A program made the translations under genes and the position numbers. A DNA stretch of 64,000 bases from Octopus sinensis (lineage: Eukaryota), in contig NC_043009.1 in assembly GCF_006345805.1 (NCBI RefSeq), positions 56,296,001 through 56,360,000 on the forward strand. The letters run 5' to 3'. Position 1 is the stretch's first letter. The number at the start of each line of letters is the position of its first letter. The notes below the pieces were generated by a model. It ran no database searches. It was given only the letters and a program-made list of their open reading frames with translations, and was not told the DNA's origin. Below are positions 15,501 to 50,486 of this stretch, piece after piece.

Positions 15501-18476
15501 AACATATTTGAAGGTGCATATTTTCAATTCATTTTAAAATAACACATTTTTCAATTTCTGTTTTTATTTGTGTTTTATTGATTTCAAAGCCTTGCCAAAG
15601 CAGTTACAATGTCTATGAATAATAAATAGTTGCCATATAAGATACTGTTTGATGTTCACACCATGTATCATTCTGCTTGACACCACATTTCATGTGCAAA
15701 GGTTTAGAATATGTTGGTCATATTAACTTAGATAATGTCAATACATAAATTCTAAGTCATCATGTTTGATTTGGCTAGGATTGTTATGACTGGTCACTCT
15801 TCCTATCGTAAAACCACAGACAGATTAAACAAGAGTATCTATGATAACAACAGAACTAGACAGATGTCTTACTAAATTAAAAATCCATTCTGGTTTACAT
15901 AGCTAGTATTTCATAGATGGCTATCATTGTTTGAAAAAGGACCAACCATTGGTAAGAAAAACATGTATAATATGAATGGATATTTAAGAAATGAAAAAAA
16001 AAATGAAAATAATAATACATTAGTAGTGATGACTGTATGGGAAGAAGTAGTGAGGTTCAGTTTGATAAAATAATCTTATACTTTAGAAGTGGGATGATGA
16101 AGGACTAAAATGAATGGGGGAAATATTCTATGTGGTTATTAAGGCACCATCAACATGTCCTAAGCTAATAAACATGTAGATATAACTAATATGGAACATA
16201 TAACCTTAGATATGTAGGCATAGGCATGGCTGTGTGGTGAAGAGGTACACTTCCTAACCATGTGATTTCAGGTTCAGTCCAACTGAGTATCCCTGGTGTG
16301 TGTGTGTGTGTGAGAGAGAGAGAGTTTATGTCTCCTAGTCATGACACCACATGATAATTGTAAACAAGCATTACTGTTACACAAGTGGTGTTGTTCATTT
16401 CTAGTCTTCTGTGAAAATATGTCCAGCCAAGGGGAAATATTACCTCGCTTGGAAATAAGGACAGATGGCTGTAGAAAATCTACCTCAACAAATTCTGTCT
16501 AATCTATGCAAGCATGAGAAAGTAAACACTGATGAGCAATGATAATGTCATTATTTGCATGAATACAAACCATTTAAATACTGATTAGCTGAATAAACAA
16601 ATCCTTTATCGAAGAAATGATCCATTAACGAAGAGAGAAATTTGTCGTGTCTCATAGTTTCACTATCACAAACAACAGTTAAGTGACGGCGGGCTCTTGT
16701 TACAGCTACATTTATACGTCTGCTTTCCGATAGAAAACCAACATCTCCTAGAAAATAAAAATGGAAAACATTTTTATGAATATATTTAAATTCTTACATA
16801 ATCATACAAATATGGTATATGCAACTGAAGCACTATTAAAATAACAATCTAATGAATCATACATAACATATATACACAATTAATAGGTCAATTACCACAG
16901 TATTTATTATGGATGTGCTATATTAAAAACACAAATATCATCAGATGGGAAATCATCTCAGCAGTGGTCAGCAAGAATGCAAGATGCATTTCGGTCTTTC
17001 CAAAGGACCAAGTGACCACTAGAAACATCAGAGAATGTTTTATTCATAGTTGAATACATTAAATATGAGAAAGTCTAAGAATGTGGACTGACTACAAGTA
17101 TGTATCATTGAAAAGATCCAAAAAAGATATACTGACTCTGATATTCTCACTGACCACTGCTGAGATGTCTCCTGATATTTATTGTTTTCAACACAGCATG
17201 ACTATAAGAGATGTTATCTCAGGATAAATACTGCAGTCACTGGCCTACCAACAGTGTATCTTTTACTTGTTTCAGTTTATTAGACTGTGGCCATGCTGGG
17301 GCACCACCTTGAAAATTTTTAGTTGAATCGACCCAACACATTTTTTGTAATGCCTGGTATGTATTCTAACAGTCCCTTTTGCCAAACCACTAAGTTACAG
17401 GGGTGTAAACACACCAGCACCAGTTGTCAAGTGGTAGTGGGGAACAAACACATGCACACACACATATACAACAGGCTTCTTTCAGTTCCATCTACAAAAC
17501 CCACTTGCATGGTAGTAGAAGACACTTGTCCAAGGAGTCAAACAGCGGGACTGACACCGGAAGTATTATACATTAAGTATGATACACAGATATACATTTT
17601 ATACACTTCTAAAATTATTGCAAATAATTATTAAAATCATAAGGTTTTCAAAATAGATACCAGATGTTTTTGAGATAATAATTCATAAATTTATATTTAT
17701 TACTGTATGTTTTATTTTGCTTTTAGAAGAAGGTGAAAGGGAATTTGAAAAGTTTGCTCACCTTTTTCATTTGACCTCACCAAGGAAATAACAACAGCTT
17801 CTTTCTCTCGGCCTTGGAAACCATCAACTGACTTTATTTCCAATTTTGGATAATCTGAACTCAATTTCAGTCGCAGTAATTCAACCTACAAAATATATAT
17901 ATATTTAGCTTAAGAACTGCACTCCATGTGGACTTTGAAGCTAGCTCCTGTGAAGGGCTAATTGGGCCTGCAGCCCAAAACTAAAGGGAGCAATAATAAT
18001 AATAAAGCATTTATTGGTACCCTACTAATATGGTATTACTTTAAATTCAGTTTAAATGAAAAACTTTTAAGTTCATGAATTTTTGGAGTTCTTTTAAAAT
18101 TTGAATTTTCAACTGTTAGAATATAATAAATCCTCATCTAGATCTGATCCCAATGCTGGATAGATTTTTCAATCATGGGACCATTCTGATTCCAAAATGG
18201 TATAATATGTCTATGAAGAGCAAATGTAGACTGAGATACAGGGGTCTCAGATGGACAAAGAGAATTTTGCATTTATTATTAGAGAGTATATTATATGTAT
18301 GCATATGTTTAAGGTGGAAATTGTTCATTATATTGTAATAACTTTGGAACAGTACTTTTTTTAATAATGATAACCAGCTGATAACATTAAACACCAGTTA
18401 TAATGATATTCTGCACAGTGATAACTAATAGCTTACACTGTTTGTGTGTGTGTATGTATATATGTGTGTGTGTGTG

Positions 18477-18515
<39 letters not shown>

Positions 18516-21500
18516 GTTATGGTGTCAATAAGACCCAAAGGTGTCAAGTAATGCTGAGTAAGTGCTATGGACAGACTATAGTTAAGCTCCAGGTTCGGTG
18601 ATTACACGAATGAGGAGTCTAACGTAGGTCATATATCAGCATGTGTATATATCAAAAAATTTTCAGAATGGAATAAAAATCCAAGGCTGTGGAAGATTTT
18701 AGAACATTTATAAATAGATCTTGCAGCTTTTCGAGGATACTTTTATATATCCCTTCATCGGAGAAGGTGTGAGAAAATGGTTAAGCAATAGATATGAAAT
18801 AGAGAGTGAAGTGGAGGAATGAAAATAGACGTGAGATATGCAGAGATATTGCATCTGTAGATCCATTATTTAGGCAGAATGGTATACATATAAGATTCCG
18901 CCTAAATAATGAATCTACTGATGCAATATCCCTGCATATCTCATGTCTATTTTCATTCCTCCACTTCACTCTCTATTTCATATCTATTGCTTAACCATTT
19001 TCTCACACCGTCTCCAATGAAGGGATGTATAAAATATCCCGGAAACAGCTGTAAGACCTTCTATTTATAAATGTTCTAAAATCTTTCACAGCTTTGGATT
19101 TTTATCTCATTCTGAAAATTTATATATATATATATACATACACATACATACACACACACAGTTGAAATATATCTTGCAAATATAATAACAAGAACAACAA
19201 TAATTACAAAATAAGCACAAGTTCAAAAATAAGGGGAAAAGTGTTGAATAGAATTGCCCTTACACTTTACTGATACTTTATTTTACTGACTCCAGAAGGA
19301 CACAAAACAAAGTTGATTTGGCAGGAACTGAACTCAGAACATAAAGAACCATTGCTACAAACCATAAAACATTTTGTTCCTGCTTTAACAATTCTGCAAA
19401 TCCATGACCTTTTTGAGGTATGTAATAACAGCAAAAAATGCAAAAAGAAATAAAAATATAAAAACATGTACATCTTAAGACAAATGTAGGATTCTAAGTA
19501 ATACCTGGAGGTTGTATGGTGCAATAACTGCAATTTCTTCAACTGAAAGACCACTAGATATAAGCTTCCTTACATGGTAATTAACAATTTCAGCCTCCCC
19601 TGTAGATGGAAAAAAAATTTTAAATACAGCATCATTCAAAATGAATGGTACAAAAATAAACATACATGTAACTGATGTAAGGAATATATTGCAAAGTGTA
19701 CAATTCATTTTGAATTAATTACTTTGTATAGTAAGAATACAAATATAATCTTTCAAGAATCACAAAGAACAGTGGTTCTCAACCATTTTTTGCCTATGGA
19801 CCCCTTTGATTCCTATTTAATTTGGATGGACCCTCAAGGCCATTTGATGTTTAAAAATTCCTTAGGAGTGGCTTTGTGGTAAGTAGTTTGCTTATCAACC
19901 ATATGGTTCCGGGTTCAGTTCCACTGCGTGGCACATTGGGCAAGTGTCTTCTACTATAGCTTCGGACCGACCAAAGCCTTGTGAGTGGATTTGGTAGACA
20001 GAAACTGAAAGAAGCCCGTCGTATATATGTATTACATCATTAGATACGTAGGCATAAACATGGCTGTGTAGTGTAGGGATTCACTTCCCAACTATATGGT
20101 TTCAGGTTCAGTTCCTCTCAGAGGTACCAACTGTTTTCTACAACAGTGCTGTGCAGGCCAAAGCCTTATAAGTGGATTTGGAAGATGGAAACTGAAACAA
20201 GCCTATTGTGAGTGTGTTTGATCATGTCTCTTTGTCTCAACATCACATGATAGTTGTAAACAAGCATCAGCAGCATGTAAGTGGTATCCTTTATTTCCAG
20301 TCTTCCATGAAAACATGTCCAACCATGGGGAAACATTAGCTTGCTTGGAAACAGGTGAGTGTAAGTGACAGGAAGGGCATCCGCCTGTAGAAAATCTGTT
20401 CCAACAAATTCTGTCAGACCCATGTCAGCATGGAAAAGGTGTTGAAATGATGATGATGATGGTGGTAGTGGTGGTGGTGGTGGTAACATTGCAGACAACT
20501 TGCTAGAATCTAATTACTTCCTTACATCAAATTATAACAAATTAAAGAAAAAGAAAAGAAAAGAAAAATTATGCAAACCTTCATTGCCCTTTGATATTTC
20601 TTCTGGAACTTCCAGTTCGGGCAGATTACAACCAGCAGTGTCAATCAATATTAGTGGTTCTGTGGTAAGTTCATTTTCTTCTATTCTTTCCAGATCCCTA
20701 AGAAAATTTATGAAAATGTTTTAACCCTTTTCTTACCATGTATAATAATTAATATAATATACAGTAACATCATTGAAACCATAAAAGCATTTTAAAAAGA
20801 AATTCAAATTTCATTAATATACTAACAGTGGTTCTTACTAAAATAAATGTTACTAGATATCTATAATAAGAACAGATATTCTTCAAACAATATCATAAAT
20901 CCTTACTTTAGAAGATGATTTTTAACAGAAGAATCTGCAATGAGTTCATTGTCATACAGCTGTTTTGATGACCATTCCATAATATGCTGATGCATTCGGT
21001 ACTGAGTGGCTAGCATTTTCTTCACTTGATTTCCATATTCCTTCAAGACTCTTTCCATCAGTGTTATCTCTAAACCTGCACTAGCTGCCCTTCAAATACA
21101 GAATAGAAAACAATTAGAAACAAAGAACCAAATACCAAATTGAAGCTTAATGAAGTGAAATTGCCCTAGCATGTAATCTCATACAACTTTAGTGCTAGGG
21201 ACATCTACTAAATTTTTGTATAAGAAATGACAATTTCTCAAGCTGGATTGCCATACTCTAAAAACACTTGATTCATTGTCCCTCAGACTCTCTGTATCCT
21301 CAAGGAATCTCTGTTTGTGAGAATGCATCAATACAAATTGCTGATTCCTACATACAGTATTTAGATATATAAATGAAACATAATGAAAAGCTGCCCTTTC
21401 AAAACACAATTCTCCATATCCATTCTATTAATACACCAACATCACACGAAATTATTTCTGCCTTAGTTGCTGAGCTCACATTCTGTAACTCTCAGAAGAG

Positions 21501-24500
21501 GTTAAGTCAAAGTGTGACCTTCTGTTCTAGACATGCATTCAGTTCTGCCCTTTGACCCCAGCAAACCAGAAGTTTCTCCCTCAGTAGATTTGAAACCCAG
21601 CAGTGTTCATGCGTTCCCATATTTATAATTATTATTCCAAGCCAGATTGTAAGGGCAGTGACACAATTTTCACAAATTTATATAACATCAACGTCACTGT
21701 CATCATTATATCTGCTTTTCTATGCTGGCATGGGTTGAAAAGGTTGCCACAGTTCAAGTCTGTTCTTATGCAATGTTACTACCCAACTAGAGAAGATGGG
21801 AGTTGTGCCTCACTCTCATGTTCCATTGTAGGCATCTTTCTACAACTGGATGTCCTTCTAATTGCCAATCACTTTACAGAGTGTACTGGGTGCACTTTAT
21901 CATACCACCAGCACTAGAGAGGTACTCATGTTCTTAACAAGACTAGAGCCCACTCTATTCAATGTTGTCTGTGACTATTCAAAGCAAATTTGACTGAGAG
22001 GAGGAATATGAATATAATGGTCAAGACATCCCTATTTCCATCACCACCATCTTACAGAAAAAAATTAAAATGTAAAATGTGAAAATACATACTCCTTTGA
22101 TATAATAGTTGGTGGAAGCTGGCAGTGATCTCCAGCCAAAACACATTTAGGAGCTCGAGGAATTGGTATCCAACAGGCAGCTTCAGTTGCCTAAAAACAT
22201 AGAAAAAATATTTTTATAAAATTTTAAGATTTGAATTAAATTAAAATATCAAAAGGATTTTAACAAATCCTTATAATATTGATTCTTAGACATAAAACAA
22301 CAAAGAACTTTTTCTTCTTTTTCTTTAACTTTCAGTCAGGAAGGAAAGCATTGCTCATGACCTGCTACAGGGCCTCCAAGACTGGTGGAAGAGAAGGACA
22401 AAGAGATATCCTCAAACCAGTAACCAGGCCTGAATTCTTGCAACAGAGTGGCCTTCACTAAAGACACCAAAGGTGCCAGGTAGTGGTGTTAAACTGGGCA
22501 ACAGATAGGCTATGGTGTGATTTGAATTCAGAATGCAAAGTGCTGGAACAGATATCACAAAGCATCTGGTCTGATACCTTCACTAGTCTGCGAATCCACA
22601 ACCTGAAAGGATAAAAGATGAAGTAGACCTCAATAGAATTTGAACTCAGCACTAGATACAGTCGAAAGCTTTGCTGATGTCAAGAGTAACAACAACACTT
22701 TCATCCAAGTTTGCAAAGTGTGAGGAATCTACTGAAGCATAGAAAATGAAGGTAGACTTTCTTAAATCAAATCCTTCTAAGAAGAAAAAGAGATTCTGAG
22801 TGACAAAAGAAATAATTGTTTATGACTGCCTTCATTATCTATAATATGTTACAAGCAGAAGGACCAGGTTTCACTTGGGTTATAAACTCATAGCCTTAGC
22901 ACAGTACCCTTTGCTTGTCGTGTAAGATTAGTGTATTTCTCAGAAAGTAATACTTACTTTTAACACTCAATGGTTTTACACTTCTGTACATTACATGCAC
23001 ATATTATTCATATAAGTGCTTCTTCATATACTCTGTTTCCTGTCTTGCCATGTTTATCACTGAGAATGTCAACTCTGGAACATCCAACATACAGCTGACC
23101 ATGTGAGAAACATGGTTGAAGGAGGTTAAGTTGAAACCTCAAGTCAGAATAACAAGCATAAATACTATAATGTTTCTATAGCAACTTATTGCCTCTACAA
23201 TAATACAGCTCCTCTATAACAATATTAATCTTCTTCAACAACATAATGCCTCTTTAACATGGTACTTCTACAACATAGTTCCTCAACAACACAGTTCCTC
23301 CACAACAATGCAGAGTCTCCGCAACAATAGTCATACAGTTGGCACAAAGTGAAAAATTGGGGAGAAATTTGATTAAATCAAATCCATTATTTACCAGGTT
23401 CTGATTCATTGACCTCAGAATGATGACAGAGAATGCTGACCAAAAAAGGATTCAAGCTCCAACTTAATCCCTTGATGCCGGTATTACCCAAAGCATGTGA
23501 GACACTGCTCCAGTTTTTTTTTATCTAATAAGGCCACACAAACACACAAGTGCCAATGAGCTCGCTTCTATTTATATTCACCGTTACAATAACATAGCAT
23601 CGTACATTTACGTCTACCGGTTTATGAAAACGGACTATGTGAAGCTATTTGTCATAATATGATATGCATGAGTTATTCTGCTCAAGTTAAAAAAATAACT
23701 TGATTGTGGTACAACTCAAAACACAGTATTATGCATGTAAAGTATCCGCATGGTCTACTGCTAGTCTCATGACTTGAACGTAACCTAAAATAGCTAAGAT
23801 AATGCACAGGAGGGCGAGCGCGCGCACCTCAAGAGATAAAGTACATGATAGCAAATGTAAACATACGTCAGCCGCTAAAAAGTCTGTGATAGATGTAGGG
23901 CAGCTCTACATCGTATATTTACGTTAACCACGGGTAGGCAAGCAAAACTGTGATCGCATATTTGCGTCAACCATTGTCAAGGGGTTAAGGAAATGAAGTG
24001 AAATGAAATAACAAAGCATTTTGTCAGCTTCTCTCTCTCTCTCTCTCAGGTCAATTATTCACCACCCTAAGAGGGGCATCAGGCCATAGAAAATCTGCCT
24101 CAACAAATTCTGTCTGACCATATAAACATGGAAAAGTGCACATTGAATGATAATGATGATGATGGCTATGTGATTGAGTTTTGGGTTCAATCTCACTGCA
24201 CAACACATTAGTAAGTTTTTTCTACTATAACCCTGAGCTGACTAAACCTTGTGAATGAATTTGGAAGACAGAAACTGAAAGAAACCCATTGTATAATAAT
24301 ACATACGTGTCTGTGCATGATTGCATGTGTGTTTTATATTTGCATCAGCACTTTTCAGAAAATCATGCAGGCATGTGGTATAAGAGATCTCATACTTGAA
24401 AATCAGATAAGGTTAGTGACAGGAAAGGGCATCTGGCTGTAAAATAATGCCTCACAAATATATTCACCTAACCCATGCCAGCATGGTAAAATGGACATAA

Positions 24501-27500
24501 AGCACGTGAATGAATAATTAAATATGTTGCACAATAAACATAGCATCCTATTTGAATATCTAGATTGTATATCCAAACTATAAATGATGGATACTTTAAA
24601 AAAAAAGATGACAATATGAAACATTGTTTAATAATTAATAAAGAGTATTACCTGTGAACATTCATCAATGACAACCATGTCAAAATAATTATATTTCAAT
24701 TCTTTAAGAGATCCATCATCAGATGCACTTGTTAAGGTGGAGAGGATAATGTCAGCACGCTTTAGGATTTCAGTGCTACTCTGTAATGTTCTTTGACGAA
24801 GTTCTTTTCGCAACACCTTTATCTCTTCTCTATATTTATATTTTTCACCATTTTTATTTGATTTCAACAATTGACTCTAAAAAAAAAAAGATGTATTTGA
24901 CTATATATCATTGTTATTTTTGCATGTCTTTATTTTATCTTTTATTTAACAGTGAGACTACAAAATTGACAAAAAGCCATATCTTTTGTCATTCGTCTTA
25001 ACGTACAAGCTCTAACATTATAACATTTTTCTTATATTTGCTGCTACACTGTCAATAACCAAGATGTTTATTGTTATTCATTTAAAATCAAACCAATTGA
25101 ATAATGATGACGATGATGAAAATATAATATTCATCATCATTGTTAAAGCATGGAATCTGTGTTGTTAAGGTTAGACAGTCTCTTAAAAGACTAACTATAG
25201 TTATACTAACTAATGTTATAAGAAAAAACCTTTAGTAAGCACAATCAGTGAAGGCGTATAGCTCAGTGGTTAGAGCATCGAGCTTACAATCGCGAGGTTG
25301 TAAGTTCGAATCCTGGACCGGGCTGCGTGTTGTGTTCTTGAGCAAGACACTTTATGACATATTGCTCCAGTTCACTCAGCTGTAAAAATGAGTTGCAACG
25401 TCACTGGTGCCAAGCTGTATTGGCCTTTGCCTTTCCTTTGTATAACACTGGTGGCATGGAGTGGGGAGACCGGTATGCATGGGCGACTGCTGGTCTTCCA
25501 TAAACAACCTTGCCCAGACTTGTGCCTGGGAGAGTAACTTCCTTGGTGCAATCCCATGGTCAGTCATGACCGAGGGGGGTCTCAGCAAGCACAATCTGAA
25601 ATAAGCTATAGTTGCAGAGGAAACATGAAAATGTATAACATCACATATATTTGTATGCATGTATGTATGTAGGTAGGTGGATAGGTGAGTGGGTATTTTT
25701 CAGGTAGATAGACACACGGTTAGTAATAGATATACAGATGAATCCGCAACCTGTCTAGTAAACTTACATAAGCTTTATCCAAATCCTTCTTGACATCCAT
25801 GATTAGCTTTCCACCATCACTCGATGAAAGAATTGCATCTAAACAATATTTTTGTAGATGCGGCAATTGACGAGCTGGATGACCAATACGAAGAATATTC
25901 TGTTTCAGCTGGGCTAATCTGTCCACAAGATTATCCACAGCAATATTTGATGGTGCACACACAAGAACCTAGAAAAAAAAAAGTATGGATGCAGACATCA
26001 CTGTGTGATTATGAAGTTAGTTTTTTCTTTCTTTTTTTATTGCCCAGAAGGGGCTAAACATAAAGGGGACAAACAAGGACAGACAAAGGGATCAAGTCGA
26101 TTACATCGACCCCAGCACGTATCTGGTACTTAATTTATCGACCCCGAAAGGATGAAAGGCAAGGTCGACCTTGGCAGAATTTGAACTCAGAACGTAGAGA
26201 CAGACGAAATACCAATAAGCATTTCGCCCAGCATGCTAACATTTCTGCCAGATCACCGCCTTATATTATGAAGTTAGCTTTGCAATCATGTGATCGCAGG
26301 TTCAATCCTAGACTGTGGCATCTTGAGTAACTGTCTTCTAGTGTAACATCAGGTTGACCAATATCTTGTGAATAGAATTTAGTAGATGGAAAGTGCAAGG
26401 AAACCTTTTGCATGCGCGTGTGTGTGTGTGAGGGGTGCATTTATGTATATATGTATGTATGTGTGTTTGTTTGCATTTGCACCCTATGGAAGTTGGGAGC
26501 CGTGGGAAATGTTGTCACGTATGACAACACAGTCTGTCCCTTCACATCTTCATAAAACCAAATGACTGAATTATGTGATGAAGAAAAGACATTAGCACAA
26601 AAACTGCTATTTGAATCATTTCAGCAAGCAGAAAGAGATAACTCCTGACATGCTTCAGTTTCTTTCCTAGCTGCATAATCAGCAAGATGTTGCAGATGAC
26701 CCACCTGTCCATCTCATGCAAGTACGAAAGAACAATGATGATGAGCATTTCCAGTTAGGTTTTTTTTTTAATACTAACTTAGACAGTGACTGAATAATTT
26801 ACATCAGCAAGTCTTATATAACTCTTCTTGGCTTTCATTGATTTGAAGAAAGCATTTGACAGGACACCATATTCAGTAATTTGGTGAGTTTTGAGGAAAT
26901 TAGGTACAGACAAATGGCTTGTGCAGGTGGTTCAAGCTCTGTACAAGGGTTCAGTAAGTAAAGTGATGAATTCAGAGTGAAGATAGGAAAGCATTAAGGT
27001 TCAGTCTTTACATCTCTTCTGTTCGTCATTGAAAAGCCATCATTGAATAGTTTAAGATTAGCTGTCCATGAGATCTCCTATATGCTGATAATCTATTTCT
27101 TATAGCTAAATTCATAGGAGAATTAGAGAAGAAATTCCAGGCTTGGAAGCTAAACCTGGAACTGAGAGGCCTTAAGGCAAGCCTGACAAATAGGAAGGTT
27201 TTAATAAGTAGGAAAGAAGACGGGACTCTAGCACCCTCAGGGAAATGGCCTTGGTATGTAGAAAAGGGGTAGGTATAAATTCCATATGCTGTACTCAATG
27301 TAAACTAAGGACACACGAGATATAATGGAATCACTGGGAGACAATCCAAGACTGTAAGCTTCATATACAATAGATGCACTGAGATAAAATAATATAAATT
27401 TGTCCTATTTGACTGACTTGGGACTAACTGGGATTATAGTAGAGACACTTGCCCAAAGTGGAACTTAACCGAAAAGCATATAGTTGGAAAGCAAACTTCT

Positions 27501-30500
27501 TAACCACACTACCATGCCTGTACCTGTTTCAGGTTGATAAAATAAATACCAGTCATATAATGAATTAGTTCAACAAAACATGCTACTTTCCAATAAATAG
27601 TAATTCTCAGTTTTATGAATGCAAAGTTTTTTTTTTATAATGGGAAGTATATACCTTTTGTTTCTGCTTGACAGCTTGCAACAAAATCTCAATAACTGTG
27701 GTAGTTTTTCCTGTACCAGGTGGGCCATGAATTATAGCAATATTCTTTTGATTTATTGCAAATTTCACAGCTTCTCTCTGAGATTCATCAAGATTTGTAT
27801 TGTAAAATGTAAAATCTAAAATAGAAAAAGAAACATGCTTATAAAAGAAATTTGTTAATCCATTGTGAGACATGGGAGGTTTCAGGACCATTTTTTTCTG
27901 CCTCCCAAAATTTATAGGCATATAATGAATATAATCAAAAATCATATGGTCAAGAAACCATGCAAAGAGCACTCTGTATGCTCTGTAAAATGATTGGCAT
28001 TAGGAAGGGCATCCAGCTGCACAAACCATTCCAAAACACACAATGGAGCCTTGTGTGGCCTCCAGCCTTATCAGCTCCTGTCAAACCATCCAACCCAACC
28101 CAGCATGGTAAACAGATGATAAATAATGAAGAGGAAGATAATGTCAGTCTTCCATCCTCTAACAAGTTGAACAGTTTGACAGGGTCCAACAAGCCAAAGG
28201 ACTATGTTGTGCTCCAGTGTCTGCTTTAGCATAGTTTCTACAGCTGGATATCTTTCTTGAAGTCAGAATGCTCTTCCTAATGTCAAGTTATCCGGGTAAA
28301 AAAAAAAAACTGTAAATATATTTATAGGATAGATATGTATACATATTTATCTTTGAAAATGATGCAGTTTGGATCTGTACCAAGATATGGTCATATTTTT
28401 AGAGAGAAAACTGCAAAGGATAGATATGTATACATATTTATCTTTGAAAATGGTGCAGTTTGGATCTGTACCAAGATATGGTCATATTTTTAGAGAGAAA
28501 ACTGCAAGAGAATTTCTTAACTAAGAACAAACCAATCTACTTTGCATTCACCAATCTGAAAGCTCAACCTTGAAAGAATGGTTTAGAGTTTGAAGGCCTA
28601 AAAGCCACCATAGTAAAAACCAAGGATCTCACTGCTAACAGAACACTAAGGTGGCTCTGGCTATTAGAGAGGAGGAAAGAACTATGATGCTATATATTCA
28701 CACTCTCTAAAGCATATTTGTGAATTCAAAGGGTTGTAACATACAAGACAATTGCAACCTACCATGACATTTTTCTGAAGAAATGAATTTATGATTAAAT
28801 AAAATATCCAATAAATCGCTGGCTCTTCCATTTCCTGCTTTATGTAATCCACTTACAGCACTGAAAAAAATTTTAATTGAATTAATTTGATTGAAAATAT
28901 TCATTGACAAGAAAATTCTTTATAAAAGATTTTAAATATCTACTGATAACATTAATATAATATGATTTTAATAACTATGCCTGACCATACAGCAATATAA
29001 TTCTGCATACAAAATAGTGAAGAAACAATATGGAAACCCATTGTATGGATGTTTGTGTGCATGTATGCAGTGTGTGATTGTACATGGCCTAGTGGTTAAT
29101 GTCTAGGGCTCACAAATATAAGGTTGTAGGTTCAGGTTCTGAACCAGGTAGTACATTGTATCATTGGGAAAGGCACATCATTTCCTGTTATTTTAATCTA
29201 CTCAGTTAAAAATGCGTATCAGCCTAGTACTGGCGCAGGAATGGCTGTGTGGTTAAGAAACTTGCTTCTGAAGCATGCAGTTTCAGGTTCAGTCACACTG
29301 TAGCACCTTGAGCAAGTGTTCCACAATAGCCTTGTGTTGATCAAAGCCTCGTGAATGCATCTGATAAGCAAAAACTGAAAGAAGCTCATTACCCTTCACT
29401 TGTATGTGTGCACAAGTCTGTGCATTGTTTACATTTGCGCTTGTCCAAAATTTTTGACTTACAAACAGTAAAATTGTTGCCGTTTCTCCTATCAATGTAC
29501 CATCTGTTGACATTGCACTTTGGAAAATGCATAAAGTAAGAGGTCCTTTACTTGAAAAGTGGGTAAAACTTATTAACAGGAAGAGCATTCAGTAGTAAAA
29601 TATTACCTCATTATATGAGTGAATATATGAATATGTATGTGTGTATGCATGTATTTGAAACCATACATAGATTTTAAGAAAATTGGTTTTTGCTCAACAA
29701 TTGTAAAAGTCAAATAAACTATGAAATTCAAACTATTCAACTCTTTAATTATTCTTTTATCATAGCAACATAATTACATACTAATTAAAAGTTAATTTTC
29801 ATTAAATAAAACACTAAATTAGGGAAGTTAATAGAAATTTAAAAATGGAATATGAATTTACCTTTTTAATCTCTTATAAGTCACATCGTTGGCAATTTTG
29901 AGAAGTTTGTAATGAGCATCAGAAGACATGGTCTCTATGTCCTTATATTCATCAAATGCTATTGAAATACTGTTAGAAGTGGTCTTGGAAACAATACCAA
30001 CTGCAATATTCTCAGACTCTGCAGCATTTTTCTGATTTAAACTGAGCTGAACAATGTCACCTATAAAATATAAAATGAATTCAATTATCTATTAACAGTT
30101 GGGACTGAAATCAATAATTCTATGTGTATCATGAGACATTATGGGAAACCTTTCAAGACATGAGCATAGCACTAGAAGGTGATAGTCAAATTTTTAAAAA
30201 AACATAATATTGCATTATGTAAATTAAATTTTAACTGAAAAAAATATTTCTGTATAATTTATTGATACTTTAATGAAAGACAAGGAAGGCTGGAAACAAA
30301 TGATATCACATGCCTAACAGTGACAATTACAACTGTTATATATCAAGACAAGAACACACACACCTCTACATATATGGTGTAAGTGTGGTTGTGTTGCATC
30401 CCATCTACATGGTTTTGAGTTCTGCCCATTGCGTAGCACTTGGGACAAGTGTCTTCTACTACTGCCCAGGGTCATAAAATCTGAGTGATCCAGTGTGATA

Positions 30501-33500
30501 AGGCTGGACCTTTGAATTACAGACACAGTATATCCAATGGGCCTCTATACAATTTATGTCTATCAAAATTCTCTTCTAAGGCTCGAGTCTATTCAGGTCT
30601 ATGGTGAAAACACTTACCCAAGATATCACAGAGTGGAATTGACCTTGGGACTTCAAAGTTGCAAAGGGAATTCTTAATTACTTAGCTGTGTTTACATCTA
30701 GAGGAGCAAGGTATCAACCTTTAAAAGCTTTTCAGGACTAGGGACATCATTGTTTAACATCCAATTCCATGCTTGCATGAGTCAGGAGGAATTTGTTGAA
30801 AAAGATTTTTTATGGCTGGACACCTTTCCTATTTCCTCACCTATTTCCAAGCAAGGTAATATTTTACCATGGAAGACAGGAAATGAAGCAACATTGCTTG
30901 CATGATGGTGATGCTCATTTGCAACCATCACGTGCTGTCAAGTCAAGGATACACACAAACACACACAAAAACATATATATACATATATGACAAGCTTCTT
31001 TCAGTTTCAATTTATCAAATTTGGTCAACCCAGTGCTATAATAGAAGGCACTTAGCCAAGATGCTGTACAGTAGAACTGAATCCAAGACTACATGGTTGG
31101 GAAGCAAGGGTTCCCAACCATGTGGTCTTCATTATATTTCATAATAAAACAAAAAATACATATAAAAATACAATATTAATGTACATTGTGTAATTTTCAA
31201 AATGTAAAATATTACCTGGTGTAAATGAATGAGATGGTAGTTCTTTCTTCATCCATGGTTCAAGTTTAACAATCATACGACCATAAAAACCAGACGCCTG
31301 GCTAGCAAGGTGCAGCTTTAGAAGGCAGACTCCTTTCTTTTCTAATTGTTTTGGAGGAAGTTTCTCATAAAAATAGCTGGAAAACCATTTAAGAAACAGA
31401 TTAAAATTCAATGCCTAACCTAATTTAAAAATGAAAAAAATAGCCTTTTCTGATAATTTCAAGAAATGAAAAATAAATTCTTAAAACTAATTACCATTCT
31501 TTGCATATTTTTAACATTTTATATTTTACTTGTTTCACTGCATTCAAGGGTTTAGTCAATCAAATCAACCCCTTATTTTTTAAAGTCTGGTACTTACTCT
31601 ATCAATCTCTTTTGTCAAACCACTACGTTGTGGAGATATAAACAAACCAACACTGGCTATCAAGCAATGGCAGTTGGGACACAAACACACACACGTGTGT
31701 GATGAGCTTCCACACAGTTTCTGTCTGCCAGATTAATGTACAAAGCTATAGTAAAAGGCATGCAGTGGAACTGAACCTGCAACCACATTGTTGCAAAGTG
31801 AACTTTGTAACCATAATGTGATGCCTGCACCTGCATCATTCATATTATTTAAAGTAATATGAAATAATATAACATTGGGTGATGTTCTTGCTTAGTAACT
31901 GACTTGATCTGAGATTGTGTTGAAGCTGGAACGATTATATCTTGAAAGATTCAAATCTTCATCGTTTAAAATACATTTTCCATGTTGGCAGGAGTTGAAC
32001 AGTTTGACAGCAAATGGCATGACCAGGGGTCACACCAGATTCCATTGTCTGTTTTATCTTGGTTTCTACAGTTGGATGTCCTTCCTAATGCCAACCACTT
32101 TACAGAGTGTAATGGGTACTTTTTACAGGGCACCATCACCAGTGCTTTATTACATGGAAAACACCAATGCTTTTTACATGGCAAACCAATGTATCTTCAT
32201 GATCATAAACATCATCATCATCATTTTAGTGTCTGCTTTTCCATGCTTGCATGAATTAAATGAAATTTGTTGAGGTAGATTTTCTATAGCTAGAAACCTT
32301 TCATGTTGCCAAGTAACTAATATTTCCCCTTAGATCAGACATGTTATCAAGGAAAACAGGAAACAAATGACACACTACTAGTAAGACAGTAATAATCACA
32401 ACTATATGATGTCAAACAAGGTGACAAACAAAGCTACACACAAATACATATGATGGGCTTCTTTCAGTTTCCGTCAACCAAATCCTCTCACAAGGCTATG
32501 GTCGGAGCAGAGCTTAAAGTAGAAGACACTTGTCCAAGATGCCATGCAGTGGGACCCAAAACTATATGACTGGAAAGTGAACTTCTTAATTACCATTATA
32601 TTTATATTTTGTCTTATTTCTTAAGAGGATCTCTCCATACTAGAAAATACCAAAATGCTTTGTTGTACATCATCAAAATAACACACACACACAAATTTCA
32701 CTGCATCTGTTAATTCCACTGAAATACATTGAAACTGTGTCAGTTATTATGTCATAAATCTACAAAATATTTTGACAGTTGATCAGTAATAGCAAGAATT
32801 AAAACAAAAGTGAATGTCACAGCATGTGTTTGTTTTAAATAGCTATCATGGATTTTACATGATGTAACTAACTGGCACTACAAAAAAAAAGTCAAACTTT
32901 AATAATCTCAACAATGTTTCAGAATAGAAAATGAGATTTGTGCATAGCAAAAAAAAACCTATATACTGAACCAGAAAGAATGTGGTTGGGAAGCAAATTC
33001 TTAACCACACAGCCATGCCTGCACACACACCCACAATTTTGTGGGTGTTTACCAGGTCAGTTGCCAGACGTCAGAGCTTCAATGTATCTATGCCCTGGGA
33101 AGCAAGGCGTTCAGGGTATAGTAGATGCCTGATGGAGGGTATTCGCTTGGTTGCATGTCTCTGAACAGTTTCCAGGAGGTCAATGACCTGAGCAAGATAG
33201 GGGTAGCAGACTTGTGATGCAAATTCTAAGTGTAGCCACACCATAGCCATATACAGCCTTAAATAGATAGCTGGAGAGCGGCTGACAAAGGGCTTGATAT
33301 GTGTTGAGAAGGAATCTTTAGGGGTTTGGATAATTCACTTCTGGAAACATGGGTGTTTCATTCATCATCCTTAAACAACCCTTATTTAGAAACCTTTGGA
33401 GTGGGTTGGGCTGCTCAACCTGAAGAAAATTCTAATTGAGCCCTTGCAAGGTCATATGCTGTTCATCTTGATATGAGATCACCATGTTGTGCCTGGTGTA

Positions 33501-33592
33501 CCCTTATCAGATGAGTAGCCATGATGAGTATGCTGGGCTTCATACATTTGTATTCCAGTGTCACTTTGAAGGCATGCACCGCTTTCTCACTC

Positions 33593-33633
<41 letters not shown>

Positions 33634-33708
33634 CCTATTTTCTTGTATTTCTGCATTCCGCTCTTCTTCAAGAAGTGCTAAAGTTTTTGAGACAAATTCC
33701 TCAACCAT
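11649..33708 (-). CDS. IGHMBP2: DNA-binding protein SMUBP-2 / IGHMBP2, UPF1-like SF1 helicase with R3H and AN1 zinc finger; 16 coding exons, 3105 nt, 1034 aa
   Basis: All exons have GT-AG boundaries with compatible phases. Motifs: [77 protein letters not shown]3H ([31 protein letters not shown]), AN1 finger. Confidence 0.96.
12275..12367. repeat. 30-bp coding tandem repeat x3 ([10 protein letters not shown]) in IGHMBP2 last exon
   Basis: ttgaatcaatagacattgcctggtttgttg repeated three times, near-perfect. Confidence 0.9.
12969..13110 (-). CDS. IGHMBP2: IGHMBP2 exon 15 (R3H N-half): [47 protein letters not shown]
   Basis: ttcag|c acceptor; gaa|gtaagg donor. Confidence 0.9.
13606..13830 (-). 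mobile_element. Family B SINE
   Basis: Same head, central domain and tail as 10950-11177 and 26021-26264. Confidence 0.8.
14261..14463. mobile_element. piggyBac-like MITE, same family as 5440-5854
   Basis: ttaa|ccctttagtg ... cactaaaggg|tt(t)aa; internal similarity. Confidence 0.75.
14705..14813 (-). CDS. IGHMBP2: IGHMBP2 exon 14 (linker): (D)[35 protein letters not shown]
   Basis: acag|at acceptor; aa|gtattg donor. It supplies exactly the phase 1 to phase 2 bridge needed and continues YL.DDIV as in orthologues. Confidence 0.8.
16221..16550 (+). mobile_element. Family A SINE with RTE-type tail (degenerate)
   Basis: ggcatggctgtgtggt head, (tg)n(ag)n, gaaaatctacctcaacaaattctgtctaatctatgcaagcatg tail. 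Confidence 0.65.
16571..16747 (-). CDS. IGHMBP2: IGHMBP2 exon 13: (G)[30 protein letters not shown]...YSANQYLN
   Basis: ctag|ga acceptor; g|gtttgt donor; helicase motif VI. Confidence 0.95.
16915..17200. mobile_element. Old foldback/MITE with about 55-bp imperfect terminal inverted repeats
   Basis: catctcagcagtggtcag (about 16957-16970) vs ctgaccactgctgagatg (17150-17167), plus outer degenerate pairing. Confidence 0.6.
17762..17885 (-). CDS. IGHMBP2: IGHMBP2 exon 12: [41 protein letters not shown]
   Basis: gtag|gtt acceptor; g|gtgagc donor. Confidence 0.95.
18658..19120. mobile_element. 463-bp palindromic (foldback) element, about 223-bp arms and 14-nt loop, in TA-rich context; each arm has a minimal hammerhead-like motif (probably Penelope-like-element derived)
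   Basis: aattttcagaatg... at 18658 pairs with ...cattctgaaaatt at 19120; loop at 18881-18894; the ORF track shows mirror ORFs on both strands. Confidence 0.85.
19505..19599 (-). CDS. IGHMBP2: IGHMBP2 exon 11: (G)[31 protein letters not shown]
   Basis: tacag|gg acceptor; cag|gtatta donor. Confidence 0.94.
19770..19850. mobile_element. Fragment of a hAT-like MITE (cagtggttctcaacc end)
   Basis: CAGTGGTTCTCAACC terminus typical of hAT/Charlie-type TIRs; related degenerate piece at about 5260-5990. Confidence 0.45.
20050..20460 (+). mobile_element. Full-length family A SINE with RTE-LINE 3' tail ending in (GAT)n
   Basis: Head, CORE-like region and tail ggaagggcatcc...gtagaaaa...cccatgtcagcatggaaaa...tgatgatgatg matching LINE end 43490-43631. 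Confidence 0.8.
20579..20697 (-). CDS. IGHMBP2: IGHMBP2 exon 10: [39 protein letters not shown]
   Basis: ttag|g acceptor; g|gtttgc donor. Confidence 0.93.
20907..21089 (-). CDS. IGHMBP2: IGHMBP2 exon 9: [14 protein letters not shown]...[13 protein letters not shown]...VKNHLL
   Basis: gaag|g acceptor; aa|gtaagg donor. Confidence 0.94.
22093..22190 (-). CDS. IGHMBP2: IGHMBP2 exon 8: [32 protein letters not shown]
   Basis: ttag|gca acceptor; ga|gtatgt donor. Confidence 0.94.
23468..23984. mobile_element. 517-bp non-autonomous piggyBac-like element
   Basis: TTAA|tcccttga ... tcaagggg|TTAA; interior much richer in CpG than the flanks. Confidence 0.7.
24652..24876 (-). CDS. IGHMBP2: IGHMBP2 exon 7: SQLLKSNK...[10 protein letters not shown] (Walker B)
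   Basis: ttag|agt acceptor; cag|gtaata donor. Confidence 0.94.
25247..25586 (+). mobile_element. Well-preserved tRNA-derived SINE (family C) with 10-bp TSD
   Basis: A-box tagctcagtgg, B-box gttcgaatcc, CORE-like cttgagcaagacac; TSD aagcacaatc at 25237-25246 and 25587-25596. Confidence 0.85.
25768..25968 (-). CDS. IGHMBP2: IGHMBP2 exon 6: [18 protein letters not shown]...DLDKAY
   Basis: ctag|gtt acceptor; tat|gtaagt donor. Confidence 0.95.
26021..26264 (-). mobile_element. Family B SINE with 13-bp TSD
   Basis: TSD attatgaagttag at 26008-26020 and 26265-26277; A-rich tail. Confidence 0.88.
26770..27330 (+). mobile_element. Older decayed relative of the RTE LINE (RT region)
   Basis: [36 protein letters not shown]...[15 protein letters not shown] remnants. 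Confidence 0.7.
27655..27815 (-). CDS. IGHMBP2: IGHMBP2 exon 5 (Walker A: [15 protein letters not shown])
   Basis: ttag|at acceptor; aag|gtatat donor. Confidence 0.95.
28326..28507. repeat. 91-bp tandem duplication (2 copies, 1 mismatch)
   Basis: aggatagatatg...gaaaactgcaa at 28326 and again at 28417. Confidence 0.9.
28763..28860 (-). CDS. IGHMBP2: IGHMBP2 exon 4: [32 protein letters not shown]
   Basis: ttcag|t acceptor; g|gtaggt donor; phases fit. Confidence 0.85.
29862..30060 (-). CDS. IGHMBP2: IGHMBP2 exon 3: (G)DIVQLSLNQ...[16 protein letters not shown]
   Basis: tag|gt acceptor; ag|gtaaat donor; ANDVTY motif. Confidence 0.92.
31216..31376 (-). CDS. IGHMBP2: IGHMBP2 exon 2: [53 protein letters not shown]
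   Basis: ccag|c acceptor; g|gtaat donor. Confidence 0.92.
33635..33708 (-). CDS. IGHMBP2: IGHMBP2 coding exon 1: [24 protein letters not shown]
   Basis: ATG at 33708; donor ag|gtattt followed by (att)n; resembles the IGHMBP2 N-terminus (ESFVTKQLDLLELERDAE). Confidence 0.88.
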
Positions 33709-34239
33709 TTTGTAAAAATTTTATATACAATAGGATATGTTATGTTCTCTTTCTCTCTTTCTTTTTATGGCTGAAAAACAATGAGTAATATTAGTTAATG
33801 AGGTTGTTCTAAGGAAATTTGTAAAAGTATAAAAACAAAATCACTTTAACAGGCCCACCACCACCACCATACAATGGAGTGGATTATTTGCAAAGGTAGT
33901 GGAGACTTGCGAAAAATTCTATTATGGAAATAGATGGATGATTTAAGTTCCCTTCACAATCTGAAAAGTAGATTGTTGGAGAAAAGACCCTGAAACATTT
34001 GTTTGGATATTTGGTATCGTATGTACCACTACAAAACTGAACTTAGACACATGGAACCTGGAGAAAACAGAAGTGTTGAAATTCTCCGTCGATTTCCAGT
34101 AAAGTGGTTCTTGTGGATGAATTGTCCATTTAAGACTGAAAGATACCTGATTTAAGAAAATAATGTTTGTAAATCATATTTTGTTTGCAGGAAGGAACAA
34201 ATCGGGTTAATTTCACCGAAGTTTAAAGTGTTACAAAAG

Positions 34240-34420
34240 ATTTCATTTTTAAATTAGGTTAATCATTGAATTTTAATCTGTTTCTTAAATGGTTTTCCAA
34301 CTGTTTTTATGAGAAACTTCCTCCAAAACAATTAGAAAAGAAAGGAGTCTGCCTTCTAAAGCTGCACCTTGCTAGCCAGGCATCTGGTTTTTATGGTCGT
34401 ATGATTGTTACACTTGAACC
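34240..34420 (+). pseudogene. Inverted DNA-level duplicate of IGHMBP2 intron-1 3' end plus most of exon 2 (source 31257-31437); acceptor AG mutated to AA
   Basis: ORF 34266-34505 repeats [48 protein letters not shown] from ORF 31139-31411; about 6 differences in about 180 bp; intronic sequence is included. Confidence 0.92.
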
Positions 34421-36019
34421 CTTAATTACAGACGTGGAGTATTGGTATTTCTCTCTACAAATTTTAAAGACAACTCAAAACACTGACGACAGAAGATCAA
34501 ATTAATTCCTATATTAATTCTTACAAGTGTGGAGAAAAATATTTAAGCTTATTCATAATTGTACTTTGTTGTGTCTGGGGAGAGTCATCATCCAAAAACG
34601 AAATATCTCTGTACTTGTTTTGTTTGTATTCTTAAAACCGGAACGGAATTGCAAAAATAAACGGTGAATGTAAACGAATTTGTTCCTCACGTATAGATCT
34701 TTTGAAATATAGAGTGGGCAAAACAAAAGTCATGAAATATAAAAAAGTGGTTGGTGCAACAGCTGAAATCACCAGATTATGCCCACAGATCGCAGACCGA
34801 ACACAGAGTTCTAAACACTGGTTATATATCATGATCAATGGACCATACCGAACAAATACAAATTTCTGGCTAATTCTCAATAAAACATTAGAAAAAATTT
34901 GAATTCATATGACTGGACAATATTTGCTTCAACTTTGTTAAATTAAATTAGTTCCTGTGTTTTCATTTCTACGTTTCATAACATTTCTGAGAAGTTAGGG
35001 TAAAGATGTTTAATAGTTAAAACTTAAGGGGAAGATGTTATAACGACTGTTCTAGTGGCAAAGGGAGTTAAAGTGATCCAGGAAGAGTATAATACAATGT
35101 AGTAGTATTTATATTATGGTTTTATTAAGTTAAAATACGAACCATACGGACACCTGAATTACAAAACACCCAAACACTTTCCAAGGTACCAGTTTCTGCG
35201 CCACACACGGATTGCGCAATGTTTCGCATAATTACGTCCCTTGTATTATTTCAATAAATAAAATAACCTACCTATATTTCTTTCGATTTTTCACAAGTCG
35301 ATCTCCCCAAATTTAACAATGTCTTTTGAGTTTGACTTTTTTAAACTTCACACCAGACATAAAATATCCTCAATTGTTATTTTTTTCTGCAAACGTTTAA
35401 AACTTAAAACGCGTACGTGTGGCTGTGTAAGTTGTGCTAGCTTTATACATGAAAGAGAAATTGTGTATGGCTAGAGGCATCTTGATGAGACCAAACTACG
35501 CGATTATATGGGCATGGAATAGATATTTAAGCTATTTTGTATTTTTTTTTTAGTGTTATAATCATTTATTCATTGAAGTTGTCTAATACAGTGGATCATA
35601 TGTCTGTAAGCAATGACCTCTTGTACAAAACAGTAGGGGCCACATAGAAACAACATGCTAGACTCACTATTTGCAGCTAATAAATCCTTATTTTACATAC
35701 GTTACCTTTAATGTTAAGTAAAGTGGGTTTATTACTGCTGTATATTTTCTCAACATAAAACAGCACACCTTAGAATTTTTGGTGACATTCAGTAGTAGCA
35801 CGTGTAATGTAAATAATACTTTATGAGACAACGAGGAAGCTTGTGATTATTAATTCAACTAACTTAATTGTTGTTTAATCGGATGAGGGTTGCCTGGTCT
35901 AGTATTTTGGGTGTTGCAATTGTAGGTTCGATTCCTAGACTGGGCAGTGCGTTGTATTTTTGAGCAACGCACTCCGTCGCTTCGACATCTGACTGCGTGG
36001 CACTTTCGGCAAGTGTCTT

Positions 36020-36219
36020 GGATCTATTCCATCTCAATCACAGATTTTAAAACTTTTTTTTTTACTAAACAGCTTGAAACTTCGAATACTGGTAGAATTT
36101 CTCATGTAGAACATGGTTTACTCTGAACGTTTTAGACAAAATTACACTATTCGAAGTTTCAAACTGTTTAGTTAAAAAAAGTTAATTATAAAAATCTGTG
36201 ATTGAGATGGAATAGATCC
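36020..36219. mobile_element. 200-bp MITE with about 70-bp TIRs and 8-bp TSD, inserted in a family A SINE
   Basis: AGTGTCTT|ggatctattccatctcaatcacagatttt ... aaaatctgtgattgagatggaatagatcc|AGTGTCTT. Confidence 0.9.
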
Positions 36220-50440: not shown

Positions 50441-50486
50441 TATTAAGATCTGTATAGAAACTCTGGGTTTTGCTTTGAAGTGATTA

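What the first reader, a model, noticed from the sequence alone, without database searches (positions are those of the whole stretch)
31257..34420. Inverted copy of IGHMBP2 exon 2 and its acceptor placed upstream of the ATG exon: a possible built-in antisense switch
Seen: 34240-34420(+) is the reverse-orientation duplicate of 31257-31437 (about 60 nt of intron plus about 120 nt of exon 2, about 97% identical, AG changed to AA). The two copies bracket the start-codon exon (33635-33708). Inference: if the pre-mRNA starts upstream of 34420 (candidate UTR exon with a donor at 35272), it can fold into an about 180-bp duplex. That duplex would mask the exon 2 splice acceptor, loop out the ATG exon (favouring skipping or back-splicing) and offer an ADAR substrate over coding sequence, which matters because coleoids recode mRNA extensively. 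Alternatively, divergent (+) transcription would give a trans-acting antisense RNA. It could also be a neutral repair scar.
Basis: partly seen in the sequence, partly recalled or inferred. Interest (0 to 1): 0.7.

Follow-up and report, generated by a model that had tools for sequence, protein, structure and literature searches.

The report
Inverted exon-2 copy upstream of octopus IGHMBP2
A 180-base piece of the octopus IGHMBP2 helicase gene (end of an intron plus start of an exon) was copied backwards into the gene's own promoter-proximal region in the ancestor of Octopus sinensis and O. vulgaris; it is real and could form double-stranded RNA, but it has drifted like junk DNA, so it looks like a DNA-repair scar rather than a built-in switch.

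Summary
Window 31257-31436 and 34241-34420 are a 180-nt inverted repeat with 6 substitutions and no indels. The window is Octopus sinensis (100% identical to GCA_006345805.1), and the gene is the IGHMBP2/SMUBP-2 orthologue on the minus strand. The copy sits at the same place in an independent O. vulgaris assembly. O. bimaculoides has an empty site there: 20 unrelated nt, with 1-2 nt of junction microhomology and no duplication of the target site, poly(A) or terminal repeats. So it is a real, lineage-specific templated inverted insertion and not an assembly error. The copy shows no constraint. It differs at 5 of 180 sites between the two species, against a local non-coding mean of 3.7. The source arm has 0 differences. 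The AG-to-AA acceptor change is in O. sinensis only. A single-copy block that has kept its CpGs (34.4-36.0 kb), a conserved TATA-like motif and conserved splice sites suggest, but do not prove, that transcription starts upstream of the copy. If so, the pre-mRNA could form a duplex of about -296 kcal/mol over the exon-2 acceptor. Best reading: a neutral repair or template-switch scar that may form dsRNA as a by-product. No transcript or editing data could be reached.

The parts
31257..31436 (-). Source arm: last 60 nt of intron 1 (31436-31377, including the acceptor AG at 31378-31377) plus the first 120 nt of coding exon 2 (31376-31257; codons Ser25 to Pro65).
   Evidence: Identical in O. sinensis and O. 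vulgaris (0/180).
34241..34420 (+). Inverted copy. Its plus strand reads as the sense sequence of exon 2, so a minus-strand (gene-direction) transcript through it carries exon-2 antisense. 177-180 nt are newly inserted. GG (34419-34420) and A (34241) are also present at the empty site, so they count as junction microhomology.
   Evidence: Present in O. vulgaris (L001 9311-9490); absent in O. bimaculoides (L002 ~9458-9477 holds 20 unrelated nt).
33635..33770 (-). ATG exon. Start codon at 33708-33706, coding part 33708-33635, donor GT at 33634-33633. A conserved TTTTTCAG acceptor (AG 33772-33771) would make 33770 the first base if an upstream leader exon is spliced on (inferred).
31216..31376 (-). 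Coding exon 2, 161 nt. The length is not a multiple of 3, so skipping it would shift the reading frame.
35272..35417 (-). Putative non-coding leader exon (inferred, not shown). Its end is the conserved AG|GTAGGT donor after 35272. Its start is guessed about 30 nt downstream of a conserved TATAAAG at 35447-35441.
   Evidence: Nearly invariant across O. sinensis, O. vulgaris and O. bimaculoides.
34400..36019 (.). Single-copy, CpG-undepleted block (observed/expected 0.5-1.15, against 0.1-0.25 on either side). It is the probable unmethylated promoter region of IGHMBP2. The copy lies at its gene-proximal edge.
11649..33708 (-). IGHMBP2/SMUBP-2 coding span (SF1 helicase AAA_11/AAA_12, R3H and zf-AN1 domains).

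Best explanation
This is a lineage-specific templated inverted insertion. In the common ancestor of O. sinensis and O. vulgaris, after the split from O. bimaculoides, a break or stalled fork about 0.5 kb upstream of the IGHMBP2 ATG exon was repaired by copying ~180 nt from a template 2.8 kb away on the opposite strand (the intron 1 / exon 2 boundary of the same gene). The new piece was joined with 1-2 nt of microhomology at each end and replaced about 20 nt of the original sequence. Since then the copy has decayed at the neutral rate. It probably lies inside the first (5'-UTR) intron. If so, any pre-mRNA molecules that still hold that intron when exon 2 is transcribed can form a long intramolecular dsRNA over the exon-2 acceptor. 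That would be an incidental by-product, not a selected regulatory device. Shown here: the repeat, its presence and absence across species, the junction anatomy, its neutral rate, and the pairing energy. Inferred: the repair mechanism, the position of the transcription start, and any RNA-level consequence.
For: Real and lineage-specific: present in O. sinensis (window = GCA_006345805.1) and at the collinear site in O. vulgaris. O. bimaculoides flanks align straight across an empty site holding 20 unrelated nt. Junctions: GG on one side and A on the other are shared with the empty site. There is no target-site duplication, poly(A) or terminal repeat, and no transposon sequence. History: two changes are shared by both copies (31415, 31374); 2 are private to the O. 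sinensis copy and 3 to the O. vulgaris copy. The copy keeps the ancestral C at 31266 (Thr62, as in O. bimaculoides and Argonauta), while the gene later changed to Lys. Neutrality: 5/180 differences between the two copies, against a local non-coding mean of 3.65 +/- 2.7 per 180 nt. Each copy has 4-6 derived changes, against ~4.7 expected for neutral drift since the O. bimaculoides split. No sign of homogenisation with the source. The acceptor AG-to-AA change is O. sinensis-only. Likely intronic position: CpG-undepleted single-copy block at 34.4-36.0 kb, conserved TATAAAG, conserved donor and acceptor. Pairing capacity: -296 kcal/mol against -49 +/- 6 for shuffled arms. 176/180 pairs are kept in the global fold of the 3.3-kb segment, worth -211 kcal/mol over a fold that excludes the helix. 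[quoted passage not shown]
Against: No transcript data could be reached, so the transcription start, and therefore whether the two arms are ever in one RNA, is inferred only. ADAR substrates tolerate mismatches, so neutral-rate sequence change does not exclude weak selection for 'some duplex'. Counts are small (5 substitutions). Without an outgroup closer than Argonauta, it cannot be shown whether the 20 nt at the O. bimaculoides site are ancestral. The local divergence ratio (2.0% against 5.2%) does not fit the published dates of 2.5 and 34 Mya (PMC10700109), so no absolute date is given.
Confidence: 0.75

Rival explanations
1. Selected cis-acting antisense element. The copy is kept because pairing with exon 2 in the pre-mRNA tunes ADAR editing, exon-2 or ATG-exon splicing, or circular RNA formation.
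For: The duplex would be very stable. The transcription start is probably upstream of the copy. A change shared by both species' copies puts an A.C mismatch opposite A31374 (Tyr26 codon, position 2). From general ADAR knowledge, that is a favoured editing context.
Against: The copy evolves at or above the neutral rate and is not homogenised with the source. The acceptor change is in one species only. The 1.5-kb leader intron holding the copy may be spliced out before exon 2, which lies 2.8 kb downstream, is made. Exon 2 is 161 nt, so masking its acceptor would mostly give frameshifted product. No editing or splicing data are available.
Confidence: 0.08
2. Assembly or sequencing artefact, such as a chimeric or fold-back long read.
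For: Short inverted duplicates near their source can arise from library chimeras.
Against: The same insertion lies at the same site in two independent assemblies of two species, with shared and private substitutions that fit a phylogeny.
Confidence: 0.01
3. Older element lost in O. bimaculoides. The copy predates the split, and O. bimaculoides deleted it, leaving 20 nt of filler.
For: The number of derived changes in the copy (4-6) is about what is expected for the whole time since the split. The O. bimaculoides site is a 20-nt replacement rather than a clean joint.
Against: It needs an extra, near-precise deletion. The copy shares T at 31427 with the O. sinensis / O. vulgaris source, against A in O. 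bimaculoides (weak evidence).
Confidence: 0.1
4. RNA-templated origin. A reverse-transcribed piece of unspliced IGHMBP2 pre-mRNA, rather than DNA, was captured at a promoter-proximal break.
For: The fragment comes from the same gene's transcribed region. Nascent RNA is physically close to its own promoter. Reverse-transcriptase-bearing retroelements lie nearby.
Against: The piece spans an unspliced intron-exon junction and has no poly(A) or target-site duplication. A DNA template 2.8 kb away is the simpler source. Sequence alone cannot tell the two apart.
Confidence: 0.12
5. Trans-acting antisense RNA from divergent plus-strand transcription.
For: None found.
Against: The plus strand of the copy encodes the sense peptide FYEKLPP...MIVTLEP. 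A plus-strand RNA would therefore be sense and could not pair with the mRNA. Divergent transcription from a promoter at ~35.4 kb would also run away from the copy.
Confidence: 0.01

Closest known systems
Templated (inverted) insertions at DNA breaks: microhomology-mediated template switching / MMBIR-type events (PMC11724301; PMC8421209)
   Same: The insert copies a nearby template in inverted orientation, with 1-2 nt of junction microhomology, no transposon hallmarks, and a small replacement at the target.
   Different: At 180 nt it is longer than the ~5-34 bp fold-back events described in yeast. This is a fixed germline event in a cephalopod, and the enzymes involved are unknown.
Intronic inverted repeats such as inverted Alu pairs, which form dsRNA in pre-mRNA and lead to A-to-I hyper-editing, exon skipping or exon circularisation (own knowledge of the mammalian literature)
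   Same: Two inverted arms probably lie within one transcription unit and flank an exon. The predicted duplex is long and near-perfect.
   Different: The arms come from the gene's own exon and acceptor, not from a transposon. One arm is coding sequence. Co-transcription has not been shown.
Editing-site complementary sequences (ECS) of ADAR targets, such as the intronic ECS of GRIA2 (own knowledge)
   Same: A non-coding segment complementary to a coding exon in cis.
   Different: A classical ECS is conserved and sits next to its exon. This one is young, evolves neutrally, lies 2.8 kb upstream across another exon, and no editing has been shown.
Hairpin-RNA / endo-siRNA loci and young miRNA genes born by inverted duplication of their target gene (Drosophila hpRNAs: PMC10292708, PMC10317233; the plant model is own knowledge)
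   Same: An inverted duplicate of part of a gene that can pair with the parent sequence.
   Different: Here there is a single inverted copy that pairs with the parent gene itself in cis, across a 2.8-kb loop holding an exon. It is not a self-contained hairpin locus. No small-RNA evidence is available.

Membership tests
IGHMBP2 / SMUBP-2 orthologue (host gene) | SF1 helicase core with the 1B domain, plus C-terminal R3H and zf-AN1 domains; orthology and synteny with other animals | tested here: met
   PF21138, PF13086, PF13087, PF01424 and PF01428 are on record. Best hits are named SMUBP-2 across molluscs and vertebrates. The histone-fold gene upstream and BBS7 downstream are conserved in the two Octopus loci where the fetched flank reaches them, and BBS7 also in Argonauta.
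Templated insertion by template switching or end joining | The inserted sequence is a copy of another genomic sequence, here nearby and inverted | tested here: met
   180 nt, 96.7% identical, template 2.8 kb away.
Templated insertion by template switching or end joining | Short (0-5 nt) microhomology at the junctions; no target-site duplication, poly(A) or terminal inverted repeats | tested here: met
   GG and A are shared with the O. bimaculoides empty site, and there are no transposon hallmarks. This assumes the O. bimaculoides flanks represent the ancestral site.
Templated insertion by template switching or end joining | Derived state: an empty site in relatives | tested here: met
   O. bimaculoides lacks it. 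No closer outgroup was available to polarise the 20-nt filler.
ADAR editing-site complementary sequence (ECS) | Base-pairs with the edited exon | tested here: met
   177/180 positions pair (including 3 G.U pairs), at -296 kcal/mol.
ADAR editing-site complementary sequence (ECS) | Lies in the same primary transcript as the exon | tested here: inconclusive
   Indirect support only: CpG block, TATA-like motif, conserved donor and acceptor. No transcripts were found.
ADAR editing-site complementary sequence (ECS) | Editing of the paired exon is observed and depends on the element | not testable with these tools
   No RNA reads are available. Literature and supplement searches found nothing for this gene.
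ADAR editing-site complementary sequence (ECS) | Evolutionary constraint on the complementary element | tested here: not met
   5/180 differences between species, against a neutral mean of 3.65.
Inverted-repeat-driven exon circularisation | Complementary sequences in both introns flanking the circularised exon | tested here: inconclusive
   The downstream arm covers the end of intron 1 and part of exon 2. The upstream arm is intronic only if the leader exon is real.
Inverted-repeat-driven exon circularisation | Back-splice junction reads | not testable with these tools
   No RNA data.
Natural antisense transcript from the plus strand | The transcript is complementary to the mRNA | tested here: not met
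   the plus strand of the copy is sense.
hpRNA / endo-siRNA locus | 21-23 nt small RNAs arising from both arms | not testable with these tools
   No small-RNA data.

The most novel reading that the evidence does not exclude
The copy is a newborn editing-complementary sequence, made by inverted duplication of the exon itself. In O. sinensis and O. vulgaris, but not in O. bimaculoides, it would give a measurable cluster of A-to-I editing over the first 120 nt of IGHMBP2 exon 2 (for example Tyr26 to Cys at the A.C mismatch at 31374). It might also cause exon-2 skipping or circularisation of the ATG exon. That would be a natural before-and-after experiment on how coleoid recoding sites arise.
Probability: 0.2. 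Interest if true: 0.6.

Novelty: new member of a known kind. Interest (0 to 1): 0.33.

Why it matters
On its own this is an ordinary kind of mutation: a small templated inverted insertion that has drifted neutrally. Its value is as a clean natural experiment. Two sister octopus species carry a near-perfect 180-bp complement to a coding exon and its splice acceptor, probably inside the same pre-mRNA, while a well-studied relative, O. bimaculoides, has the empty site. Coleoids edit mRNA on a massive scale, and how the necessary double-stranded structures arise is not well understood. Public RNA-seq and Iso-Seq from these species could show whether a brand-new long duplex is enough to create editing or splicing changes. 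The inverted pair could also promote inversion of the 2.8-kb segment carrying the start-codon exon of a gene whose human orthologue is known, from my own knowledge, to be mutated in SMARD1 and CMT2S. No such inversion is seen between the two species.

Tried and rejected
1. Transcript evidence for the 5' UTR: two searches with N-terminal fragments of 178 and 111 aa, meant to catch transcriptome-derived partial proteins, found no octopus entries. An exact look-up of the RefSeq protein found only the genome record. Gene ranges in the locus tool cover the CDS only, so they give no UTR information.
2. Editing data: no paper links this gene to octopus editing. The Cell 2017 recoding paper was not found under the PMC id I recalled from memory. 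The supplements of PMC8382921 that are held as text do not mention SMBP2 or IGHMBP2.
3. Deep conservation of the upstream region: Argonauta shows no nucleotide similarity upstream of the ATG, so it cannot polarise the empty site or test the leader exon.
4. Known RNA genes in the region: no tRNA. There is no credible Rfam family; the single hit, a miRNA-family match at 36051-36183, scores 29.5 bits against a threshold of 100 and is just a palindrome.
5. Transposon capture: the flanks are single-copy and collinear with O. bimaculoides, and no TE sequence adjoins the copy.
6. Gene conversion between the arms: rejected, because differences persist and accumulate independently in each species.
7. 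Absolute dating: not attempted, because local divergences (2.0% and 5.2%) do not scale with the published 2.5 and 34 Mya (PMC10700109).
Full report
**1. Observation**

The window holds an inverted repeat with arms at 31257-31436 and 34241-34420. It is 180 nt long, with 174/180 identical positions, no gaps and sharp edges. A window-wide BLAST finds only these two copies. The six differences (source/copy) are:
- 31415 G/A
- 31414 G/T
- 31377 G/A (splice acceptor AG becomes AA)
- 31374 A/G
- 31295 G/A
- 31266 A/C

Among the 13 inverted pairs of at least 80 nt within 10 kb in the window, this is the most similar (97%, against 70-88%). It is also the only one that involves an exon; the rest look like interspersed repeats.

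**2. Gene and species**

tblastn and protein searches identify a complete IGHMBP2/SMUBP-2 orthologue on the minus strand. The RefSeq O. sinensis protein XP_029644227.1 (P0122) maps exon by exon from 33708 to 11652.
- The ATG exon's coding part is 33708-33635.
- Coding exon 2 is 31376-31216 (161 nt).
- The source arm is therefore 60 nt of intron 1, including the acceptor, plus the first 120 nt of exon 2 (codons 25-65).

The window is 100% identical over 33.7 kb to O. sinensis GCA_006345805.1, chromosome CM016871.1. Window position w corresponds to 56,296,000 + w on that record.

**3. Presence and absence across species**

| Species | Locus | State at the site |
|---|---|---|
| O. sinensis | window / L004 | copy present |
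| O. vulgaris (GCA_951406725.2, independent assembly; about 96-97% identical in BLAST alignments, 2.0% substitutions in non-coding DNA) | L001 9311-9490 | copy present at the collinear position |
| O. bimaculoides (GCA_001194135.2) | L002 ~9458-9477 | flanks align straight across; 20 nt (AGTGTGCAGTCACCTGTCGT) in place of the 180 nt |

GG at one junction and A at the other are shared between the insert's ends and the empty site. There is no target-site duplication, poly(A), terminal repeat or adjoining transposon sequence. This rules out an assembly artefact and shows a lineage-specific insertion.

**4. History from polarised substitutions**

- The source arm is identical in O. sinensis and O. 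vulgaris (0/180).
- Two changes are shared by both copies (31415, 31374), so they predate the species split.
- Two changes are private to the O. sinensis copy (31414, and the acceptor change at 31377).
- Three changes are private to the O. vulgaris copy.
- At 31266 the copies keep C (Thr62), the state in O. bimaculoides and Argonauta. The gene changed to A (Lys62) after the duplication.
- The AG-to-AA "loss of acceptor" is therefore one private O. sinensis mutation. The O. vulgaris copy still has AG.

**5. Test for constraint**

Non-coding substitution divergence between O. sinensis and O. vulgaris across 31.7-38.9 kb is 2.0% (143/7113). Windows of 180 nt have 3.65 +/- 2.7 differences, and the copy has 5. 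Each copy carries 4-6 derived changes. About 4.7 would be expected if it had drifted neutrally for the whole time since the O. bimaculoides split, where local divergence is 5.2%. So the copy shows no slow-down and no homogenisation with its source. It probably arose early on the O. sinensis / O. vulgaris stem. Published dates are about 34 Mya and 2.5 Mya for the two splits (PMC10700109), but local divergences do not scale with them, so I give no absolute age.

**6. Is the copy transcribed with the gene?**

No direct evidence could be obtained. The indirect evidence favours a start upstream of the copy:
- A single-copy block at 34.4-36.0 kb has kept its CpGs (observed/expected 0.5-1.15, against 0.1-0.25 around it). 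This is typical of an unmethylated promoter.
- Inside that block, a TATAAAG (35447-35441) and, about 170 nt downstream, an AG|GTAGGT donor after 35272 are nearly invariant in three Octopus species.
- A TTTTTCAG acceptor (AG at 33772-33771) precedes the ATG exon and is also conserved.

I put the chance that the copy lies in a 1.5-kb leader intron at about 65-70%.

**7. What could follow at the RNA level (inference)**

- In a minus-strand transcript the two arms would pair at -296 kcal/mol, against -49 +/- 6 for shuffled arms. The pairing has 3 G.U pairs and 3 true mismatches, and the longest perfect run is 78 bp.
- In a global fold of the 3.3-kb segment, 176/180 pairs form in register. This is worth -211 kcal/mol over the best fold without the helix.
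- The helix would bury the exon-2 acceptor and 120 nt of coding sequence, and would loop out the ATG exon.
- The leader intron may be removed before exon 2, 2.8 kb further on, is transcribed.
- Exon 2 is 161 nt, so skipping it shifts the frame.
- One shared change puts an A.C mismatch opposite A31374 (Tyr26). This is a specific, testable editing prediction.

**8.

The plus strand of the copy reads as sense exon 2 and translates to FYEKLPP...MIVTLEP. Plus-strand transcription would therefore not give an antisense RNA.

**9. Verdict**

This is a real, fixed, lineage-specific templated inverted insertion. It is of the kind made by microhomology-mediated template switching or end joining (PMC11724301, PMC8421209), and it evolves neutrally. 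It can form dsRNA with its parent exon if the two are co-transcribed, but nothing indicates selection for that. It is a new member of a known kind. Interest is modest, mainly as a natural with/without comparison for dsRNA-dependent editing in octopuses.

Noticed in passing
window 39806-43633 (and ~7107-8601): A ~3.8-kb block is present in O. sinensis but absent at the collinear site in both O. vulgaris and O. bimaculoides. It carries reverse-transcriptase (RVT_1) and PHD-finger ORF fragments (39822-40861, plus strand) and arrays of a 62-nt tandem repeat (41633-41756, 43261-43462). About 1.5 kb of it (39805-41305) recurs at ~90% identity, inverted, at about 7.1-8.6 kb, which matches a GC-rich block there. 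It looks like a recent species-specific retroelement insertion between IGHMBP2 and its upstream neighbour.
   Followed up: partly
window 47436-48140 (+): An intronless 234-aa ORF with a histone-fold CBFD_NFYB_HMF domain (E 3e-18). By eye it looks like DRAP1/NC2-alpha. It is the conserved upstream neighbour of IGHMBP2 in O. vulgaris and O. bimaculoides too.
   Followed up: partly
window 33593-33630: A perfect (AAT)12.7 microsatellite starts 4 nt after the GT donor of the ATG exon.
   Followed up: no
window 18716-19059: A near-contiguous palindrome (171-nt arms, 88% complementary, 2-nt spacer) lies inside an IGHMBP2 intron. It looks like a MITE hairpin and would form intronic dsRNA much more readily than the long-range pair.
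   Followed up: no
window 36019-36220: A self-complementary ~200-nt palindrome (79%) lies at the distal edge of the CpG-rich block. It gives a weak, sub-threshold Rfam miRNA-family hit (29.5 bits against a threshold of 100). SINE-like repeats start at 36220.
   Followed up: partly
L001 ~9290-9310 (O. vulgaris), next to the junction at window 34421-34441: O. vulgaris has a private 16-nt deletion (AATACTCCACGTCTGT) starting 5 nt from the insertion junction.
   Followed up: no
window 35313-35360 (-): The putative leader contains a 15-codon upstream ORF (ATG at 35360). One-base length differences in an A-run in O. vulgaris and O. bimaculoides would shift its frame, so it is probably not conserved.
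   Followed up: no
proteins P0002, P0001, P0121/P0122: Annotation differences between species. The O. vulgaris model lacks 19 aa ([19 protein letters not shown]) that are encoded in the window at ~19600-19540. The O. bimaculoides model has a non-homologous hydrophobic stretch after the helicase core, probably retained intron sequence. O. sinensis isoforms X1 and X2 differ by 20 aa inside a [10 protein letters not shown] tandem repeat in the last exon. X1 has three accessions for one protein, which suggests alternative UTRs.
   Followed up: no
window 50417-51076 (-): A 219-aa ORF made of tandem QTVPTVPNC-like units. It is most likely a minisatellite rather than a gene.
   Followed up: no
window 34421-38900 compared with 31700-33634: Divergence between O. 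sinensis and O. vulgaris is half as high upstream of the copy (1.44%) as in intron 1 (3.0%). This fits a hypomethylated or constrained promoter region.
   Followed up: partly
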